DNA of 64,000 nucleotides, taken from the sequence record OZ196212.1; one strand, given 5' to 3'. How positions within the stretch are numbered: position 1 is the stretch's first letter; every line of letters begins with the position of its first letter. Positions 14,722 through 30,863 of the stretch are shown in pieces. The position numbers and the translations under genes were made by a program. The notes below the pieces were generated by a model. The model had not been told where the DNA came from, searched no databases, and saw nothing but the letters and a program-made list of their open reading frames with translations.

Positions 14722-15246
14722 CTATCTGCGTCCTTTAGTTTTGTTTCTTTTTAGTTTTCGTTTGAGCTTGCGAACTTCTTTACGCTTCGCGATTTTATCA
14801 GCTCGTCGAACCGCGTCATAATCCGCAGCACAAGACGCTGCAAACGCATCGGGCTTGAATACTGGCTCTTGACCCACATATCCGAAGATCGTGCCCTTAG
14901 CTTCGTTATACGCGACGCTAGACTTGTGTTTAGGGTCTGGGTTAATGTCAACGTGTACTTCAAAGCCGCGAGGGCCGCACATTGGCTTAACTTTCAACGC
15001 ACATTCACCTGCTTTGTATACTTCGTTCATCAAGCGGCTACGAATACCATCAGTAGATGACATATAGGCTTTCTCAGTTTCGATTGTTTTGAATACTTGA
15101 GCGCCTTTACTGCCTTCCAAGTGAATTATGATTACAGTCGCGTAACTGATCATATCACTTTTTCGTTTACTGTCACACCCAACATAGATCGTGCTACTCG
15201 GGTGACTATTTTGAATCGCTGTTTCTACAGCTTCCCAATCGAACAT
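14722..15246 (-). CDS. YkuK/DUF458-like RNase H-fold protein
   Basis: IYVGCDS...YATVIIIH...LMNEV...EVHVDIN...AASCAAD. Confidence 0.75.
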   Translation of the reverse strand: MFDWEAVETAIQNSHPSSTIYVGCDSKRKSDMISYATVIIIHLEGSKGAQVFKTIETEKAYMSSTDGIRSRLMNEVYKAGECALKVKPMCGPRGFEVHVDINPDPKHKSSVAYNEAKGTIFGYVGQEPVFKPDAFAASCAADYDAVRRADKIAKRKEVRKLKRKLKRNKTKGRR

Positions 15247-15295: not shown

Positions 15296-16729
15296 TTATA
15301 AAGCGTATCGGTCGACACCGACAGTCTTCAGCATGATTTTCACTGGCTCAAGCTCACCACCCAACAGCGACGTTAGAATTGAAGGGCTGCAACCCGACAC
15401 TAACGCTGTGTTCGCTTCACCTGATTTAACAGGCACGTTGTCTAGACGACCACGCAAGTTCCAGAACACTAGTTGCGGCATTTCGTAGCCCGCGTTCGCA
15501 TACATGACTTTGATTGCATCGAAGTTCGTAGTGTTACGAGTATGCCAGCCACCGCCAGTACGAGCTTGATCGAATTCCATATCGCTCATGATAAGCAATT
15601 TGGTTGGCATTTCGTCTTGCGACAAGTTTGCCGTACGAGCGCGTTCAAGAAGAACTTCGAAGCATCGTGTGATGTTCGTGCTCATATCTTCGCCAGATCG
15701 TTGCATGTTGTCAAGACGCGACTTCAAGCTATCACCCGTCAACTTGTGAAAGTGCGGATCACTTGAGAACGAAATGAATTGATCTTTGAAGATACCCTCA
15801 TTACGTTCAGCGACGTAGATGCCAAGAGACATCGCAACTTCTTTACAAGTCACACTACCACCGTGTTCACCGTTGATACCACAGCCCATAGAGCCAGAAA
15901 CATCAACAACTGGAATCACGCGCTCGTCAGAGCCTTCCATGTAGTTCGGTAGAGCTTTCCATTGCTCATTTGCAACACGATGGTCACCCATTTTAACGCT
16001 GCGAACAACATCGTATGGGTAAACAGCACCTGCATTGATCTTCGCTTCACCTTTCACAAGCGATGTGATGTACTCACCGTATGCAGATTCAGCGTTACGA
16101 CCGAATGCTTTCTGATAGCGTGCAGACGCTACAGATGGCAGTTTGCCGAACTCGATCTCGCCCCAATTACGAGCACACATCTTCTGTTCAACAGTGTCAG
16201 ACAAAAGAGAGATCACTTTACGCCACTGCTTCGCGTTTACACCAATCGACTTGATTGTGCGCTTGAACACGACTGCGTTTTTGCTGCGCTCACGAGGAAA
16301 CCACTTAGCAGCAAGCGCGTTTTTGTCATTGACAATCGCGTGTGTCCACAGAGTGATAGCATCAGCTTCAAGAGAAGTACCGAACGCAGATACTAAGTCA
16401 TCGAAACGACCAAGTTCTGGGATCTTGCGCATAACTAGACGCGCTACTTCTGGTTGTTCTTTACACAGACGTGCAAAGATTTTGCGGAAAGTACCGCGCT
16501 CACCTGCACCGCCACGCACGTCGCGAGACCATAGCAAGATGCGAGTTGCAAGCTCAGGGTTTTCACCGAATGCGCGATTAAACGCAGTTAGTGACTGATC
16601 ATTACCGCGCATAGCGCCGATAGTGAAGAACAAGTTTAGACACTCGTTACCCGAAGTGCTGTGTGTTACTGCACCGTTTGCTGTACGTGAATCGTTAGAT
16701 TGCATAGCGTTCATAAATAAACTAGTCAT
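15296..16729 (-). CDS. DUF2828 plus vWA domain protein (TROVE/Ro60-like architecture)
   Basis: TANGAVTHSTSG..LNLFF, RDVRGGAGER, LAAKWFPRE, GAVYPYDVV, MIDAS DVSGSM and SDMEFD; ATG 16729 has a GGAG RBS. Confidence 0.85.
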   Translation of the reverse strand: MTSLFMNAMQSNDSRTANGAVTHSTSGNECLNLFFTIGAMRGNDQSLTAFNRAFGENPELATRILLWSRDVRGGAGERGTFRKIFARLCKEQPEVARLVMRKIPELGRFDDLVSAFGTSLEADAITLWTHAIVNDKNALAAKWFPRERSKNAVVFKRTIKSIGVNAKQWRKVISLLSDTVEQKMCARNWGEIEFGKLPSVASARYQKAFGRNAESAYGEYITSLVKGEAKINAGAVYPYDVVRSVKMGDHRVANEQWKALPNYMEGSDERVIPVVDVSGSMGCGINGEHGGSVTCKEVAMSLGIYVAERNEGIFKDQFISFSSDPHFHKLTGDSLKSRLDNMQRSGEDMSTNITRCFEVLLERARTANLSQDEMPTKLLIMSDMEFDQARTGGGWHTRNTTNFDAIKVMYANAGYEMPQLVFWNLRGRLDNVPVKSGEANTALVSGCSPSILTSLLGGELEPVKIMLKTVGVDRYAL

Positions 16730-16765
16730 TGCTGTAAGCTCCAAATATCAAGGATCAGAAAAATA

Positions 16766-17356
16766 ATGTTTCATATTGTATATCAAATAACAAATTTAAT
16801 AAACAACAAAATTTACGTCGGTAAGCATTCAACCGAAAACATTCATGACGAATACATGGGTTCGGGAAAGCTTTTGCTCAGAGCCATTAAAAAGTATGGC
16901 AAGGAGAATTTCACAAAAGACATACTGTTCGTATCATTAGACGAAAAGGATGCATATAAAGCAGAACATGAGATCGTGAATGAAGATTTTGTTCTCCGTG
17001 AAGACACATATAATCTCAAAGTTGGCGGTCTTGGTGGATCATCAGGAATAGAATCTCCATGCAAAGGTCGTCAACTGAGTGAAGATACTAAACTAAAAAT
17101 GAGAAAAAGTAAACAATTTTCTCAAAAACATTTAGATTATCTCTCAACTAAATTATCTGAGTACAACAAATCTAGACAAGGTGTTCAAAGAGACGATCTA
17201 AAGGGTAACTCAAACCCAATGCATCGAGGTAATTGGCATACACCCCACGGAATATTTGAAACATCAAGCGAAGCAGCGTGTGCCATAAAATGTAGTCAAT
17301 CAACAATTGTTAGACGTTGCAAAAATCCAAATTTTGAGGATTGGTACATCAAATAA
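16766..17356 (+). mobile_element. free-standing GIY-YIG homing endonuclease (Seg-like)
   Basis: IVYQITNLINNKIYVGKH...YMGSG; AT-rich; opposite orientation to its neighbours. Confidence 0.85.
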
Positions 17357-20950: not shown

Positions 20951-20977
20951 AAAAAAACCCGCCTAAAGAGGCGGGTT
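20951..20977 (-). terminator. terminator ending the tRNA/ncRNA island
   Basis: AACCCGCC-TCTTTA-GGCGGGTTTTTTT. Confidence 0.85.
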
Positions 20978-20990
20978 CATCGTGCATAAA

Positions 20991-21182
20991 CAGACATTCG
21001 TGAACAGTTTTAAAGTCTTTCGCATTAATCACATTTGACTTTCATGTTTAACGATACATGAATCCCTACCAACAAGTTGATAGTCGTACCTTCGAGTTTA
21101 TTGCTTTAAGTCACCGAGAATGCGGCTATGCGTTACTCTATCTCTTATTTAAGTTTTGTTAGTTGGTTGCTGTACAATGTCT
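20991..21182 (-). ncRNA. structured RNA closed by a CAGCAA-motif stem (element A)
   Basis: AGACATT-GTACAGCAA...ACG-AATGTCT-G; internal hairpins. Confidence 0.65.
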
Positions 21183-21192
21183 TTGCAAAATT

Positions 21193-23652: not shown

Positions 23653-23764
23653 CTGAGTGTCGTTTATACCGCGTCTCCAAGACCTGAGATACCAACTCAG
23701 CATGGGATTCGAACCCACCGACGTTTCTTGTATCGAAAGAAATTTTAAATTGCTGTAAACACTC
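23653..23764 (-). ncRNA. circularly permuted tRNA mimic (YrlA-like, element D)
   Basis: GAGTGT-TTACAGCAA...T arm GTGGG-TTCGAAT-CCCAT, then CTGAG/CTCAG hairpin...ACG-ACACTC-AG. Confidence 0.7.
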
Positions 23765-23773
23765 TTAGTATTT

Positions 23774-24366: not shown

Positions 24367-24439
24367 AAGACACTGTAATCGTTTGGTTTTTTTCTTCAAA
24401 TAAAAAATACTGGTTTGTTTGCAGAATGATTACTATCTT
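24367..24439 (-). ncRNA. minimal motif RNA (element F)
   Basis: AAGATA-GTAATC-ATTCTGCAAAC...ACG-ATTAC-AG-TGTCTT. Confidence 0.55.
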
Positions 24440-27085: not shown

Positions 27086-27200
27086 TGGCTGACCGATGCG
27101 GGACTCGAACCCACGACCACGTGCTTAACAGGCAATTAGAAATGCGGTAGCGATACTTATCAATATCATTTACGTGCTCTACCACTGAGCTAATCGGTCA
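27086..27200 (-). tRNA. tRNA-Asn(GTT)-like RNA with a 38-nt insertion in the anticodon stem
   Basis: D arm, intact CT-GTT-AA loop, T arm, GCCA; insert 27134-27171. Confidence 0.75.
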
Positions 27201-28723: not shown

Positions 28724-29089
28724 TTATGTTTCTAGCCATCTACCAATCTTTGCAGCGAAGATGTTTTCTTCTTCGTTGATTAGCGCAGTCGATTTCATTT
28801 GATGAAACATATCTTGCTTGTGAAGCGTATCAAGTTTGACTGCACATTGCAACAACTCTTTTACGCTTCGCATAATTTCTTCTGAATCAAGCTGCGACGT
28901 TTCAGGATGATAAATCAAATTCTGAAGCACAGCTTCTATGTTGCCGTAACAACCCATACCAATAAAATTGATGATAAGTCGATACTGCATTTCTACTGAG
29001 AATGAACAATGCTTGCGCAAATTGCGCTTAACGACTTCACATACTAGCAACTTCTCTTCGAGTTCTTGCTTTATTGCTGTAAACTTCAT
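28724..29089 (-). CDS. hypothetical protein
   Basis: 121-aa ORF, GAGGTG RBS. Confidence 0.7.
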   Translation of the reverse strand: MKFTAIKQELEEKLLVCEVVKRNLRKHCSFSVEMQYRLIINFIGMGCYGNIEAVLQNLIYHPETSQLDSEEIMRSVKELLQCAVKLDTLHKQDMFHQMKSTALINEEENIFAAKIGRWLET

Positions 29090-29105: not shown

Positions 29106-29228
29106 TGGTGGAGAGTGCGGGATTCGAACCACGCGGCCAAAAGATTTACTTAGTTAGTGTTTGCAGCATGAATACTTGACAATATTCTGTCAACGTTCTT
29201 TTGCTCTACCAGACTGAGCTAACTCTCC
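29106..29228 (-). ncRNA. CCA-ended tRNA scaffold with motif insert in place of the anticodon loop (T1)
   Basis: GGAGAGT/ACTCTCC-A-CCA, D arm, AAAGA/TCTTT stem enclosing ~52 nt. Confidence 0.7.
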
Positions 29229-29234
29229 ATTTAA

Positions 29235-29374
29235 AACACATTGAGCAGGGTGCAGGATTCGAACCTGCGTCACGATCTTAGAATGATATGCTGTTTGGGT
29301 TGCTGAATACAAGCTATACAACTTGCGTTTATGCTACGTGTGCTAGCCACTACACCAACCCTGCTCAATGTGTT
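29235..29374 (-). ncRNA. tRNA mimic with 17-bp extended acceptor and motif insert (T2)
   Basis: D arm, T arm GCAGG-TTCGAAT-CCTGC, no CCA, ATTCAGCAACC. Confidence 0.75.
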
Positions 29375-29607: not shown

Positions 29608-29753
29608 TAGAGCATATTGGTCGTGCGTACTAGAATCGAACTAGTCCTACGATCTCCTAATGATATGCGTTATTGGTTGCTGAATACTTACTTGTCAGTA
29701 AGCGTTATGCTACGTGTGCTGCCACTACACCAACGCACGACCAATATGCTCTA
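29608..29753 (-). ncRNA. tRNA mimic with 21-bp extended acceptor and motif insert (T3)
   Basis: paralogous to T2; T arm ACTAG-TTCGATT-CTAGT. Confidence 0.75.
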
Positions 29754-30163: not shown

Positions 30164-30415
30164 TTACGATTGAATGATAATACCGCTTTCCGTCTCACCG
30201 CGCTCAAGAGCTGCGTGCTTAATCTGTAGTTGTGCTACTGCTTGTTGAAGTTCTGTGATCGTCTGATCATATAGCTTCATGTTGCTTTGCATGTGTTTAA
30301 TCTGATCGCTCTGCAAACCAACGATATAGGTAAGCAAGATGATGCTTTCATTATCTTGCAGTTCTTCACCGTCGTTGTATTTCTTCAGAACAGATTGGAT
30401 TGTAATATCAGCCAT
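30164..30415 (-). CDS. hypothetical coiled-coil protein
   Basis: MADITIQ start overlapping the 57B stop. Confidence 0.6.
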   Translation of the reverse strand: MADITIQSVLKKYNDGEELQDNESIILLTYIVGLQSDQIKHMQSNMKLYDQTITELQQAVAQLQIKHAALERGETESGIIIQS

Positions 30416-30863
30416 TGTTTTCAGCCCATGACAAATCGAGTGGTTCAACGTATTCGTCTACAAGTCGAACTTCGGCTTCGACGAACAAGGGAGTGATTGC
30501 ATCGTCATACGAAAGCGTGACGTGCGGAGTATAGTCAGGGTAATCGTGAGTACCACCGATAGAGATAAGGTCTTCATGACGCGCTACAAGCTCAGGACAT
30601 TTCATCTTCGCAACAACTGCGTGATTACCGTCTTGAGTTTTCCAGCAATCGATATACTCAATAGTTGCTACGAATGTCGTATCAACGGCAGGCACATCAA
30701 TTTGATTGCGACTGTATAGAACAGTGACGTGAAATTTATCTGGATCTAAAGGATTTGCTAGACGAAGCGATGTCTGCAAGCGAACTAACTCTTGTTTACT
30801 CGATTCGTCTAGTTTGATACCAACGTACGTCCCCTGACTTTCAAGGAACGTAGATAGTTTCAT
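30408..30863 (-). CDS. acb1: gp57B / Acb1 anti-CBASS 2H phosphodiesterase
   Basis: two HxT motifs (FHVTVLYS, PHVTLSY); WKTQDG, THDYPDYTPH and EYVEPLDLSW match T4 57B. Confidence 0.92.
   Translation of the reverse strand: MKLSTFLESQGTYVGIKLDESSKQELVRLQTSLRLANPLDPDKFHVTVLYSRNQIDVPAVDTTFVATIEYIDCWKTQDGNHAVVAKMKCPELVARHEDLISIGGTHDYPDYTPHVTLSYDDAITPLFVEAEVRLVDEYVEPLDLSWAENNG

What the first reader, a model, noticed from the sequence alone, without database searches (positions are those of the whole stretch)
29106..29228. CCA-ended tRNA scaffold whose anticodon loop is replaced by a ~52-nt motif module
It has a normal 7-bp acceptor, A73 and CCA, so it might be charged. The AAAGA/TCTTT stem encloses ACG-TTGAC-AG-loop-GTCAA-GTATTCATG-CTGCAAAC. 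The T stem has a bulged T. The CTGCAAAC/AG variant is shared with element F (24367-24439), which suggests two motif subtypes.
Basis: partly seen in the sequence, partly recalled or inferred. Interest (0 to 1): 0.7.

Follow-up and report, generated by a model that had tools for sequence, protein, structure and literature searches.

The report
tRNA-shaped partner RNA for phage Ro60-like protein
This is a real, conserved tRNA-shaped RNA gene of a KVP40-like Vibrio phage whose anticodon loop carries a small hairpin-plus-CNGCAA module, and the same module sits next to Ro60-like protein genes in many unrelated phages, so it is most likely a new, tRNA-scaffolded kind of Y RNA and not a decoding tRNA or a dead gene.

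Summary
Window 29106-29228 (- strand) is a tRNA cloverleaf (Rfam tRNA 49.8 bits) with a 7-bp acceptor stem, A73 and CCA. A 52-nt insert lies between AAAGA and TCTTT.

It is a 7-bp hairpin (GAATATT-GTCA-AGTATTC), then 3 nt, then CTGCAA. This module covaries strongly: 33 sequences, 99% paired, all 7 pairs covary.

The window has four copies, each inside a long tRNA-like gene. KVP40 annotates three orthologous long tRNA-likes as tRNA pseudogenes. IMG/VR phage contigs hold many more, usually inserted after tRNA position 28 or 29.

The same stem + CNGCAA motif, in open form with the stem made by the RNA's ends, lies beside DUF2828/DUF7788 genes. That was seen in 40 of 84 such phage loci, including Mycobacterium, Campylobacter, FelixO1-like and Aeromonas phages. 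The window encodes this protein at 15299-16744, and its model matches Ro60 (Foldseek E=1e-8).

Best reading: a circularly permuted, tRNA-scaffolded analogue of YrlA/Y RNA that binds the phage Ro60-like protein. Binding is inferred, not shown.

The main rival is a spliced mini-intron. No RNA reads were available to decide. Charging is untested, and the "two subtypes" idea is not supported.

The parts
29106..29228 (-). The finding ('type A'): a 123-nt tRNA-shaped RNA gene with encoded CCA. Acceptor stem 29222-29228 / 29110-29116, anticodon-stem strands 29197-29201 / 29140-29144, 52-nt insert 29145-29196, T arm 29117-29134.
   Evidence: Rfam tRNA 49.8 bits. Orthologue of KVP40 'tRNA-Pseudo-4'. 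7 orthologues 90% identical, 97.3% of pairs kept, compensatory changes.
29161..29187 (-). Module core inside the finding: 7-bp hairpin P2 (GAATATT / AGTATTC, loop GTCA), then ATG, then CTGCAA.
   Evidence: Alignment A2 of 33 modules: 99.1% paired, all 7 pairs covary, 0/500 shuffles reach the observed score. Model R1 scores 34.4 bits, E=3e-5.
29244..29364 (-). Second long tRNA-like ('type C'), 12 nt upstream of the finding on the RNA strand. Module at 29294-29332, inserted after tRNA position 28. Removing it leaves stem CGATC/GATCG and loop ATTCTAA.
   Evidence: Own scanner. R1 34.7 bits. No Rfam or ARAGORN call. Orthologues in F86 and 1.081.O are annotated as tRNA.
29618..29739 (-). Third long tRNA-like ('type E'), CCA-ended. 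Module at 29671-29709, inserted after position 28. The remaining loop is ATTAGGA.
   Evidence: Own scanner. R1 39.7 bits, E=2e-6. Not called by ARAGORN or Rfam.
27090..27199 (-). Fourth long tRNA-like ('type B', orthologue of KVP40 tRNA-Pseudo-3). Module at 27136-27174, inserted after position 28. Removing it leaves a perfect Asn-type arm, CGTGC-CTGTTAA-GCACG.
   Evidence: Rfam tRNA 49.1 bits. R1 27.6 bits. The phage D479 copy has a compensatory change across the insert, CG|AGC..GCTCG.
15299..16744 (-). Gene for the Ro60-like protein (Pfam DUF2828 + DUF7788; helical-repeat ring plus vWA domain). Proposed protein partner of the modules.
   Evidence: Pfam E=3e-46 and 8e-26. AlphaFold model pLDDT 74, pTM 0.73. 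Foldseek top hits are Ro60 1yvr (E=1e-8), phage phiLo Ro60 9l5y and 9kop. Homologues in 710 phage records, some named 'Ro-like RNA binding protein'.
23653..23766 (-). Open-form CAGCAA RNA between tRNA-Gln and tRNA-Thr. Terminal stem GAGTGT/ACACTC, then TTA, then CAGCAA, enclosing a permuted tRNA-like domain (T arm, closed acceptor hairpin, D-like arm). It is built like YrlA.
   Evidence: Conserved in KVP40 with an invariant stem + CAGCAA and a compensatory change in the closed acceptor hairpin.
20991..21183 (-). Open-form CAGCAA RNA at the distal end of the tRNA array. Stem AGACATT/AATGTCT, then (G)TA, then CAGCAA, about 170 nt enclosed, 3' G. An intrinsic terminator follows at 20951-20977.
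   Evidence: Stem, CAGCAA and terminator are conserved in KVP40.

Best explanation
The element is a stable non-coding RNA, not a decoder. Its tRNA body (acceptor, D and T arms, CCA) serves as a scaffold. The scaffold would be cut out of the tRNA-cluster transcript and stabilised by the normal tRNA enzymes.

In place of the anticodon loop it displays a module: a 7-bp hairpin whose 3' strand runs, after 2-4 nt, into single-stranded C-N-G-C-A-A. This module is the hairpin-capped, circularly permuted version of a 'terminal stem + CNGCAA' motif. That motif marks the small RNAs encoded beside Ro60-like (DUF2828/DUF7788) genes in many phages.

I propose that the phage's own Ro60-like protein (window 15299-16744) binds the module, much as Ro60 binds the GNCGAA-type 5' strand of Y RNAs. 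The tRNA-shaped part would be the effector end, tethering the Ro-like ring to tRNA-handling proteins or presenting a tRNA look-alike to them. This would fit the phage's large tRNA investment (26 tRNA genes in the window) and possibly tRNA surveillance, repair or counter-defence.

Shown: the RNA structure and its conservation; the recurrence of the module; the protein's fold; the genomic association.

Inferred: expression as a stable RNA; physical binding; the downstream role.
For: 1. The module is a selected RNA structure: 33 sequences, 99.1% paired, all 7 pairs covary, 0/500 shuffles.

2. All four window copies lie in tRNA-like scaffolds on the transcribed strand of the tRNA array.

3. Among dereplicated IMG/VR lineages with long-insert tRNA genes, a DUF2828 gene lies in the fetched flank of 10/22 module-bearing lineages against 2/71 others (Fisher p=4e-6). 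It was the only widely shared neighbouring protein family.

4. That protein has the Ro60 fold.

5. The open form (stem starting A-R-G, then 1-4 nt, then CNGCAA, with the partner strand ending Y-T then G) was found 81 times in 84 DUF2828 loci. The reversed-sequence control gave 8. Of the 81, 76 are on the gene's strand, 55 lie within 700 nt of the gene, and they fall in 40 loci. Examples:
- Mycobacterium phage Snenia: three tandem copies just 3' of the gene, one with a YrlA-type tRNA-like domain.
- Campylobacter phage F336: two copies just 5' of the gene.
- FelixO1-like phage Alf5.

6. In Aeromonas phage avDM12 the two module-bearing tRNA-likes sit 2.3 kb from the Ro-like gene, away from the main tRNA array.

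7. The loop end of the hairpin matches the termini of the open form. Closing pair A-U in 25/33, first loop base G in 31/33, last loop base A in 26/33. The open form has 5' A-A...U-G 3'.

8. Permuted YrlA-like members (L181, L200, window 23653-23766) have the Ro-type stem emerging from the same place in the tRNA-like domain, after 'ACG' at position 28.

9. In the window all four long tRNA-likes duplicate anticodons already served by normal tRNAs. Orthologues carry 8-nt or odd loops. Both fit a non-decoding role.

10. Precedent: Ro60 genes with adjacent tRNA-like Y RNAs in bacteria and phages (PMC4201824; PMC12135203).
Against: - No binding or expression data. No RNA-seq run holding this phage was listed, and the runs holding KVP40 behaved as DNA.
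- In the window the Ro-like gene is 12.4 kb from the finding, with the tRNA array between them. Both features could simply favour tRNA clusters.
- Only 2-5 of the 80 best DUF2828 loci have the hairpin form within 10 kb.
- The motif differs from the canonical Ro60 site GNCGAAN0-1G.
- In most stem-inserted copies, removing the insert restores a textbook anticodon arm with U33, R37 and ordinary anticodons. That is what an intron would look like.
- A general closing helix for the insert was not supported, so the three-dimensional layout is unknown.
Confidence: 0.6

Rival explanations
1. Mini-intron. The insert is a new class of short (about 40-55 nt) mobile tRNA intron that is cut out and the halves ligated, giving a working tRNA. 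For the finding this would be Asn (GUU) or Tyr (GUA), depending on the junction. The hairpin + CNGCAA would be the recognition handle for the splicing machinery, and the Ro-like protein could be a cofactor.
For: - In 23 distinct stem-inserted copies, a single deletion after position 28 or 29 ('ACG|') restores a 5/5-paired anticodon stem and a 7-nt loop with U33 and R37.
- A compensatory change spans the insert: CG|TGC..GCACG in KVP40 against CG|AGC..GCTCG in D479.
- Nearly identical inserts sit in different tRNA bodies of one contig (L114, L026), which suggests mobility.
- KVP40-type phages encode RNA ligases and a polynucleotide kinase-phosphatase (own knowledge).
Against: - The same motif occurs as free-standing terminal-stem RNAs, and in permuted YrlA-like RNAs where there is nothing to splice.
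- The intact anticodon arm is equally explained as a retained branch of a three-way junction.
- There is no group I core, no Rfam ribozyme match and no bulge-helix-bulge layout (inspection).
- For the finding itself the junction is ambiguous, and the window copy would give a loop with C33 and G37 (sequences).
- All four window copies are redundant with intron-less tRNAs, and orthologues have 8-nt loops.
Confidence: 0.17
2. The module binds some other factor, or acts in cis (for example a processing or stability signal in tRNA-cluster transcripts). Its neighbourhood with the Ro60-like gene is then indirect, because both live in or beside phage tRNA arrays.
For: - DUF2828 genes sit right next to tRNA arrays in Alf5, F336, avDM12 and the window.
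- 37 of 80 DUF2828 loci hold tRNAs.
- No physical evidence links the protein to the module.
Against: - The control set was also made of tRNA-cluster loci (long-insert tRNAs without the module), and only 2/71 of those had the gene.
- Open-form copies hug the gene (46 within 300 nt, 76/81 on the same strand) even in phages with no tRNA array nearby, such as mycobacteriophage Snenia, which has a single tRNA 1.2 kb upstream.
- T5's large tRNA region has no module.
Confidence: 0.18
3. Decaying tRNA pseudogene, as annotated in KVP40 ('tRNA-Pseudo-4'): a tRNA gene disrupted by a junk insertion.
For: KVP40's record flags it as a pseudogene. ARAGORN does not call it. There is no 7-nt anticodon loop.
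Against: - 90% identity across phages whose flanks are 77-80% identical.
- Compensatory changes in four helices.
- The insert's hairpin covaries across dozens of unrelated phages.
Confidence: 0.03

Closest known systems
YrlA / bacterial and phage Y RNAs bound by Ro60 (Rsr) (Rfam RF02553; Chen et al. 2014, PMC4201824; phage phiLo Ro60-Yrl, PMC12135203)
   Same: Small RNAs encoded on the same strand near a Ro60-type ring protein. They combine a protein-binding stem, with a short conserved purine-rich motif on the strand leaving the stem, and a tRNA-like domain with canonical T and D arms. M. smegmatis YrlA is cleaved by RNase P and receives CCA addition; other tRNA enzymes modify S. Typhimurium YrlA (PMC4201824). 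The window also has a truly YrlA-shaped member at 23653-23766.
   Different: - The motif is C-N-G-C-A-A, not GNCGAAN0-1G.
- The protein is the divergent DUF2828/DUF7788 type (12-17% identity to solved Ro60s).
- In the finding the topology is inverted. The tRNA has its natural open acceptor end with CCA, and the protein-binding stem is capped by a tetraloop and placed in the anticodon loop.
- Rfam's YrlA model gives only 28 bits (gathering score 69), for a match that straddles two neighbouring genes.
tRNA introns (group I introns in bacterial and phage tRNA anticodon loops; protein-spliced bulge-helix-bulge introns of archaea and eukaryotes, including non-canonical positions)
   Same: An insert interrupts the anticodon arm of an otherwise normal tRNA gene. 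In many family members its removal restores a perfect arm. In type A a short stretch of the insert (TAAC) can pair with the GUUA of the would-be anticodon, as in many eukaryotic and archaeal introns (own knowledge).
   Different: 52 nt is far too short for a group I core, and no Rfam intron or ribozyme match was found. No bulge-helix-bulge layout. No splicing endonuclease is known in Vibrio or these phages. The same motif exists outside tRNAs.
Stable 'tRNA-like' RNAs of unknown function in phage tRNA clusters (T5 RNA1 and RNA2 as annotated in NC_005859; T4 species 1 and 2 RNAs, own knowledge)
   Same: RNAs of 100-145 nt encoded among phage tRNA genes, with tRNA-like parts, long known as stable species without a function.
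   Different: T5's tRNA region has no hairpin + CNGCAA module (best 15.7 bits). No sequence relationship was seen. T4 was not examined.
Engineered 'tRNA scaffold' for expressing structured RNAs (Ponchon and Dardel; own knowledge)
   Same: The design principle is identical: a foreign structured RNA replaces the anticodon loop, so that the chimera is processed and protected like a tRNA.
   Different: That is a laboratory construct. This one is natural, conserved and paired with a dedicated protein gene.

Membership tests
tRNA (Rfam RF00005) | Cloverleaf scoring at or above the family's gathering score | tested here: met
   49.8 bits against 29, all 71 model positions matched.
tRNA (Rfam RF00005) | 7-nt anticodon loop with U33 and a readable anticodon | tested here: not met
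   52 nt lie between the anticodon-stem strands. ARAGORN makes no call. The candidate 5' loop in the window copy is ACGTTGA, with C33 and G37.
tRNA (Rfam RF00005) | Conserved tertiary nucleotides and T loop (U8, A14, G18 G19, GTTCRANYC) | tested here: met
   Read directly from the sequence. They are invariant in 7 orthologues.
tRNA (Rfam RF00005) | Aminoacylation and use in translation | not testable with these tools
   Needs charged-tRNA sequencing or an acid-urea northern blot.
Y RNA / YrlA (Rfam RF02553) | Encoded near a Ro60-type gene, on the same strand | tested here: inconclusive
   Same strand, but 12.4 kb away, against within 4 kb for YrlA in PMC4201824. In Aeromonas phage avDM12 the equivalent RNAs are 2.3 kb from the gene. 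Association across lineages: p=4e-6.
Y RNA / YrlA (Rfam RF02553) | GNCGAAN0-1G motif on the 5' strand of the Ro-binding stem | tested here: not met
   The invariant hexamer is C-N-G-C-A-A.
Y RNA / YrlA (Rfam RF02553) | Ro-binding stem formed by the RNA's 5' and 3' ends, and a closed acceptor-like hairpin | tested here: not met
   In the finding the stem is capped by a GNNA-type loop and the acceptor end is open with CCA. The feature is met by the separate window RNA at 23653-23766.
Y RNA / YrlA (Rfam RF02553) | tRNA-like T and D arms | tested here: met
Y RNA / YrlA (Rfam RF02553) | Score at or above the Rfam gathering score | tested here: not met
   28.2 bits against 69, for a match spanning parts of two adjacent genes.
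Y RNA / YrlA (Rfam RF02553) | Physical binding to the Ro60-type protein | not testable with these tools
   Needs gel-shift assays or RIP.
Group I tRNA intron | Catalytic core (P3-P9), typically over 200 nt | tested here: not met
   The insert is 52 nt. No Rfam intron match even at E<=10.
Protein-spliced tRNA intron (bulge-helix-bulge) | Two 3-nt bulges separated by a 4-bp helix at the junctions | tested here: not met
   Inspection of the junctions in types A, B, C and E. No consistent closing helix was found.
Any tRNA intron | Exon-exon junctions in RNA | tested here: inconclusive
   No RNA run was listed for the window. The four runs holding KVP40 gave contigs without joints and look like DNA.
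tRNA pseudogene (the KVP40 annotation) | Relaxed constraint or decay among relatives | tested here: not met
   90% identity against 77-80% in the flanks, with compensatory changes.

The most novel reading that the evidence does not exclude
Phages from many families (T4-like vibrio and Aeromonas phages, FelixO1-like, Campylobacter, Listeria, Staphylococcus and mycobacteriophages) may share an undescribed ribonucleoprotein system. It would consist of a DUF2828-type Ro60-like ring and a family of 'CNGCAA' RNAs. In some lineages the binding module has been grafted into complete, possibly chargeable tRNAs, at a fixed site in the anticodon arm. These chimeras could physically couple the Ro-like ring to the tRNA world (synthetases, EF-Tu, ribosome, or host anticodon nucleases). 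They might act as bait or decoy, as a repair platform for cleaved tRNAs, or as substrates of a new protein-assisted tRNA splicing route.
Probability: 0.35. Interest if true: 0.9.

Novelty: new variant of a known kind. Interest (0 to 1): 0.78.

Why it matters
- It turns three 'tRNA pseudogenes' that have sat in the KVP40 annotation (dozens of relatives carry the same elements) into candidate functional RNAs with a named protein partner.
- It suggests an RNA ligand motif (stem + CNGCAA) for DUF2828/DUF7788 proteins. This family is present in at least 710 sequenced phages and has no characterised function.
- It extends the Ro60-Y RNA paradigm. The tRNA mimicry of Y RNAs appears here in the opposite topology, as a real tRNA carrying the Ro site. 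That makes the long-standing question of what the tRNA-like domain of Y RNAs is for directly testable in easy phage-host pairs such as FelixO1-like coliphages and KVP40.
- It shows that tRNA finders miss or mislabel a widespread class of phage genes. ARAGORN missed all four copies in this window.

Tried and rejected
Rejected as the functional helix.
- Closing helix (P1) between the two ends of the insert: the best helices are no better than shuffled tails in nearly all cases. Rejected as a general feature.
- Known RNA families: Rfam at gathering and at permissive E-values gave only tRNA, plus a weak spurious YrlA match.
- gp57B-like '2H phosphoesterase / RNA ligase' gene upstream (30411-30863) as a splicing enzyme: it is Acb1, an anti-CBASS protein, in conserved T4 synteny. 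Rejected.
- RNase H-like gene next to the Ro-like gene (14725-15246) as a partner nuclease: found in only one other locus. Rejected.
- RNA evidence: no RNA run for the window. The runs holding KVP40 showed no joints and look like DNA.
- Neighbour protein 28727-29089 as a handle for more loci: only KVP40 and VH7D were found in IMG/VR.
- Reverse association of the hairpin form: only 2-5 of 80 DUF2828 loci have it. This first looked like evidence against a link, until the open form was recognised.
- A loose hairpin + CNGCAA regex is too noisy (188 hits against 123 in the control), as was a loose open-form scan of the window.
- Literature: searches for short tRNA introns in phages, KVP40 pseudo-tRNAs, DUF2828, and YrlA in phages found no description of this motif.
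- Element F: too few diverged relatives to test.

Full report
**Where we are.** The window is a KVP40-like (Schizotequatrovirus) Vibrio phage, 100% identical over the test region to Vibrio phage 6E35.1a and its relatives. On the - strand between about 21.2 and 28.7 kb it carries 26 ordinary tRNA genes covering all 20 amino acids. The finding lies at the promoter-proximal end of this array.

**The observation.** On the - strand, 29228 to 29106 reads as a tRNA:
- a 7-bp acceptor stem;
- a canonical D arm;
- a 5-bp AAAGA/TCTTT stem;
- a T arm with a GTTCGAATC loop;
- A73 and an encoded CCA.

Rfam's tRNA model scores it 49.8 bits and places a 52-nt insertion in the anticodon loop. ARAGORN does not call it. 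KVP40's record annotates the orthologue as 'tRNA-Pseudo-4'.

Seven orthologues are 90% identical, while the neighbourhood is 77-80% identical in the same phages. The drawn structure is 97.3% paired, with compensatory changes at acceptor pair 7:66, in the T stem and in the insert hairpin. It is therefore real and under selection, not a decaying gene. The bulged T in the T stem is a 1-nt indel absent from KVP40, VS2 and F86.

**What the insert is.** The window has three more long tRNA-likes:
- 27090-27199 (orthologue of KVP40 Pseudo-3; Rfam 49.1 bits);
- 29244-29364;
- 29618-29739, which neither ARAGORN nor Rfam detects.

KVP40, VH7D and nt-1 have yet another type (Pseudo-5), and phage D479 has several. 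All share one module: a 7-8-bp hairpin with a 4-nt loop that starts with G and is closed by U-A or U-G, then 2-4 nt, then C-N-G-C-A-A.

A gapless alignment of 33 modules from unrelated contigs shows 99.1% pairing. All seven pairs covary, and 0 of 500 shuffles reach the observed score. A covariance model built from it finds exactly four copies in the 64-kb window, all inside the long tRNA-likes.

In the finding the conserved hairpin is GAATATT-GTCA-AGTATTC.

**A wide family, and the intron look.** I scanned IMG/VR for a common D arm followed 60-90 nt later by a T arm. The scan returned more than 115 loci, and 95 of the matches had a proper acceptor stem. Many carry the same module.

In 23 distinct cases a single deletion after tRNA position 28 or 29 (right after '..ACG') restores a perfect 5-bp anticodon stem and a 7-nt loop with U33 and R37. 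The anticodons are ordinary: Asn, Ile, Lys, Gln, Arg, Pro, Phe, Cys, Gly. Type B of KVP40 and its D479 counterpart differ by a compensatory change that spans the insert.

This looks like a mini-intron, and I took that reading seriously. The finding itself belongs to a second placement class: the whole module with its linkers sits inside the loop, and the junction cannot be fixed (Asn GUU or Tyr GUA readings). A closing helix for the insert is not statistically supported. No Rfam ribozyme or intron family matches. No RNA reads were obtainable: no RNA run was listed for the window, and the four runs that hold KVP40 gave contigs without joints and look like DNA.

**The protein link.** I clustered all ORFs around module-bearing loci. 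One widely shared family emerged, a ~480-520-aa protein with Pfam DUF2828 + DUF7788. The window encodes it at 15299-16744 on the same strand as the tRNA array.

Its AlphaFold model (pLDDT 74, pTM 0.73) matches Ro60 (1yvr, E=1e-8, probability 1.0), the Ro60 of Thermus phage phiLo (9l5y) and a TROVE domain (9kop). Homologues occur in 710 phage records, some annotated 'Ro-like RNA binding protein'.

Among dereplicated lineages of long-insert tRNA loci, the gene lies in the fetched flank of 10 of 22 module-bearing lineages and 2 of 71 others (Fisher p=4e-6). The control loci are also tRNA clusters.

**The decisive comparison.** At first the reverse test looked bad. Only a few of the 80 best DUF2828 loci contain the hairpin module.

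Reading the DNA next to the gene changed that. Three examples:
- In mycobacteriophage Snenia the 300 nt just downstream hold three tandem RNAs. Each is built as stem 5' strand, 2-5 nt, CAGCAA, variable interior, stem 3' strand. The middle one encloses a YrlA-type tRNA-like domain.
- Campylobacter phage F336 has two such RNAs just upstream of the gene.
- FelixO1-like phage Alf5 has two just downstream, inside its tRNA array.

A strict definition of this open form finds 81 instances in 84 DUF2828 loci, against 8 in reversed sequence. Of these, 76 are on the gene's strand, 46 lie within 300 nt, 55 lie within 700 nt, and they fall in 40 loci. The variable base is A in 60, T in 11 and C in 6.

In Aeromonas phage avDM12 the two module-bearing tRNA-likes lie 2.3 kb from the gene, not in the main tRNA array.

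The capped and open forms are the same motif. The open stem begins 5' A-A... and ends ...U-G 3'. The hairpin's loop end is ...U-[G-N-N-A]-A..., with closing pair A-U in 25/33, first loop base G in 31/33 and last loop base A in 26/33. The hairpin is thus the open stem with its termini joined by two nucleotides.

Permuted, YrlA-like members (L181, L200) even keep a complete anticodon arm split after 'ACG' at position 28. This is the same junction as in the tRNA-embedded form. The 'perfect anticodon arm' is therefore a shared architectural feature (a three-way junction in the anticodon stem) and does not by itself show splicing.

The window also contains two open-form RNAs, both conserved in KVP40 with the stem and CAGCAA invariant:
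- 23653-23766, YrlA-like;
- 20991-21183, followed by a terminator.

As a negative control, the tRNA region of T5 has no module. T5 carries 25 annotated tRNA genes, one of them flagged as a pseudogene, and annotated 'tRNA-like stable RNAs'.

**Interpretation.** Ro60 proteins bind Y RNAs through the 5' strand of a terminal stem that carries GGUCCGA or GNCGAA-type motifs. Bacterial and phage YrlA RNAs add a tRNA-like domain that tRNA enzymes recognise (PMC4201824; PMC12135203).

The present family reproduces that logic with a different hexamer (CNGCAA) and a divergent Ro-like protein. In the finding the topology is circularly permuted: the tRNA is native and CCA-ended, and the Ro-type stem is capped and displayed in the anticodon loop. 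I therefore read the finding as a tRNA-scaffolded Y-RNA-like partner of the phage Ro60-like protein (confidence about 0.6).

Three further points fit a non-decoding role:
- all four window copies duplicate anticodons already served by normal tRNAs;
- orthologues of types C and E have 8-nt or unusual loops, and one has a UCA anticodon;
- the motif occurs outside tRNAs.

What the particle does is inference. By analogy, it would tether the ring to tRNA-handling proteins, or present a tRNA look-alike to them.

**Rivals.** The intron reading (about 0.17) is not excluded and could even coexist, with the Ro-like protein as a processing cofactor. An indirect association through tRNA arrays (about 0.18) is weakened by the tRNA-cluster control and by Snenia. 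The pseudogene reading (about 0.03) is contradicted by conservation.

'Might be charged' is untested. 'Two motif subtypes' is not supported, because the N of CNGCAA varies freely. 'Element F' may be a weak open-form copy (a possible split stem, AAGA..GTAATC / GATTAC..TCTT, around ATT-CTGCAA). However, it scores 11.7 bits and lacks diverged relatives.

**Novelty.** The held literature describes Ro60 with YrlA in bacteria and phages, and a phage Ro60 with Yrl RNAs. I found no description of the CNGCAA motif, of its link to DUF2828 proteins, or of tRNA-embedded forms. Rfam 15 has no model that detects them. I rate it a new variant of a known kind.

Noticed in passing
window 29618-29739 (-): A CCA-ended long tRNA-like ('type E') that neither ARAGORN nor Rfam reports. 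It carries the best-scoring module in the window (39.7 bits). Its residual loop is ATTAGGA here and in F86, but ATAGGGA in KVP40 and VS2.
   Followed up: yes
window 23653-23766 (-) and 20991-21183 (-): Two open-form CAGCAA RNAs inside the tRNA array. The first is a YrlA-like permuted tRNA mimic between tRNA-Gln and tRNA-Thr. The second is about 190 nt and closes the array just before an intrinsic terminator (20951-20977). Both are conserved in KVP40.
   Followed up: yes
L005 3513-3634, L001 8998-9120, L006 3507-3625 (orthologues of window 29244-29364): The residual 'anticodon loop' of type C changes between close relatives. It is ATTCTAA in the window and the 8-nt ATTCATAA in KVP40, F86, VS2, CZ01 and nt-1. 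It is the 8-nt ATTTCCAA in VH7D and CTTCAAA (anticodon UCA, which would read UGA) in 1.081.O. This could be fast evolution or diversification of a bait loop.
   Followed up: partly
IMG/VR loci L015, L043, L048, L057, L081, L034, L047, L051, L077, L122: A second, different class of 50-65-nt inserts in phage tRNA genes. They sit at the same site (after 'ACG', position 28/29) and share a C/T-rich stretch, a GC hairpin and a ...GGTTAC(T)T or GGTTATC element near the 3' end. There is no CNGCAA, no Rfam match and no DUF2828 gene nearby.
   Followed up: no
It may be a third open-form copy, but the evidence is weak (11.7 bits) and only close relatives and F86 have it.
   Followed up: partly
window 30411-30863 (-): The gp57B homologue upstream of the long tRNA-likes, often annotated 'RNA ligase', matches Pfam Acb1 (anti-CBASS 2H phosphoesterase) at E=1e-44. 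It is not a tRNA-splicing enzyme.
   Followed up: yes
window 14725-15246 (-) and 16766-17353 (+): The Ro60-like gene is flanked by an RNase H-like (PF04308) gene and a GIY-YIG SegE-like homing endonuclease gene. Neither is a conserved neighbour in other phages.
   Followed up: partly
L211 (phage T5) 10285-10645 and 12839-13084: T5's record annotates several stable RNAs of unknown function in its tRNA cluster, two of them called 'tRNA-like' (RNA1, 144 nt; RNA2, 125 nt). They lack the CNGCAA module, so phages may have invented tRNA-like non-coding RNAs more than once.
   Followed up: partly
L200 6234-6345: Next to a DUF2828 gene lies an RNA with only an acceptor stem, a T arm and CCA (no recognisable D arm), plus a hairpin-CAGCAA module. 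This is a third way of combining tRNA parts with the motif.
   Followed up: no
L114 4649-4977 and L026 10274-10648: Within one contig, nearly identical modules sit in tRNA bodies with different acceptor stems and anticodons (Asn and Lys; Arg and another). This suggests copying of the module between tRNA genes, or duplication followed by anticodon change.
   Followed up: no
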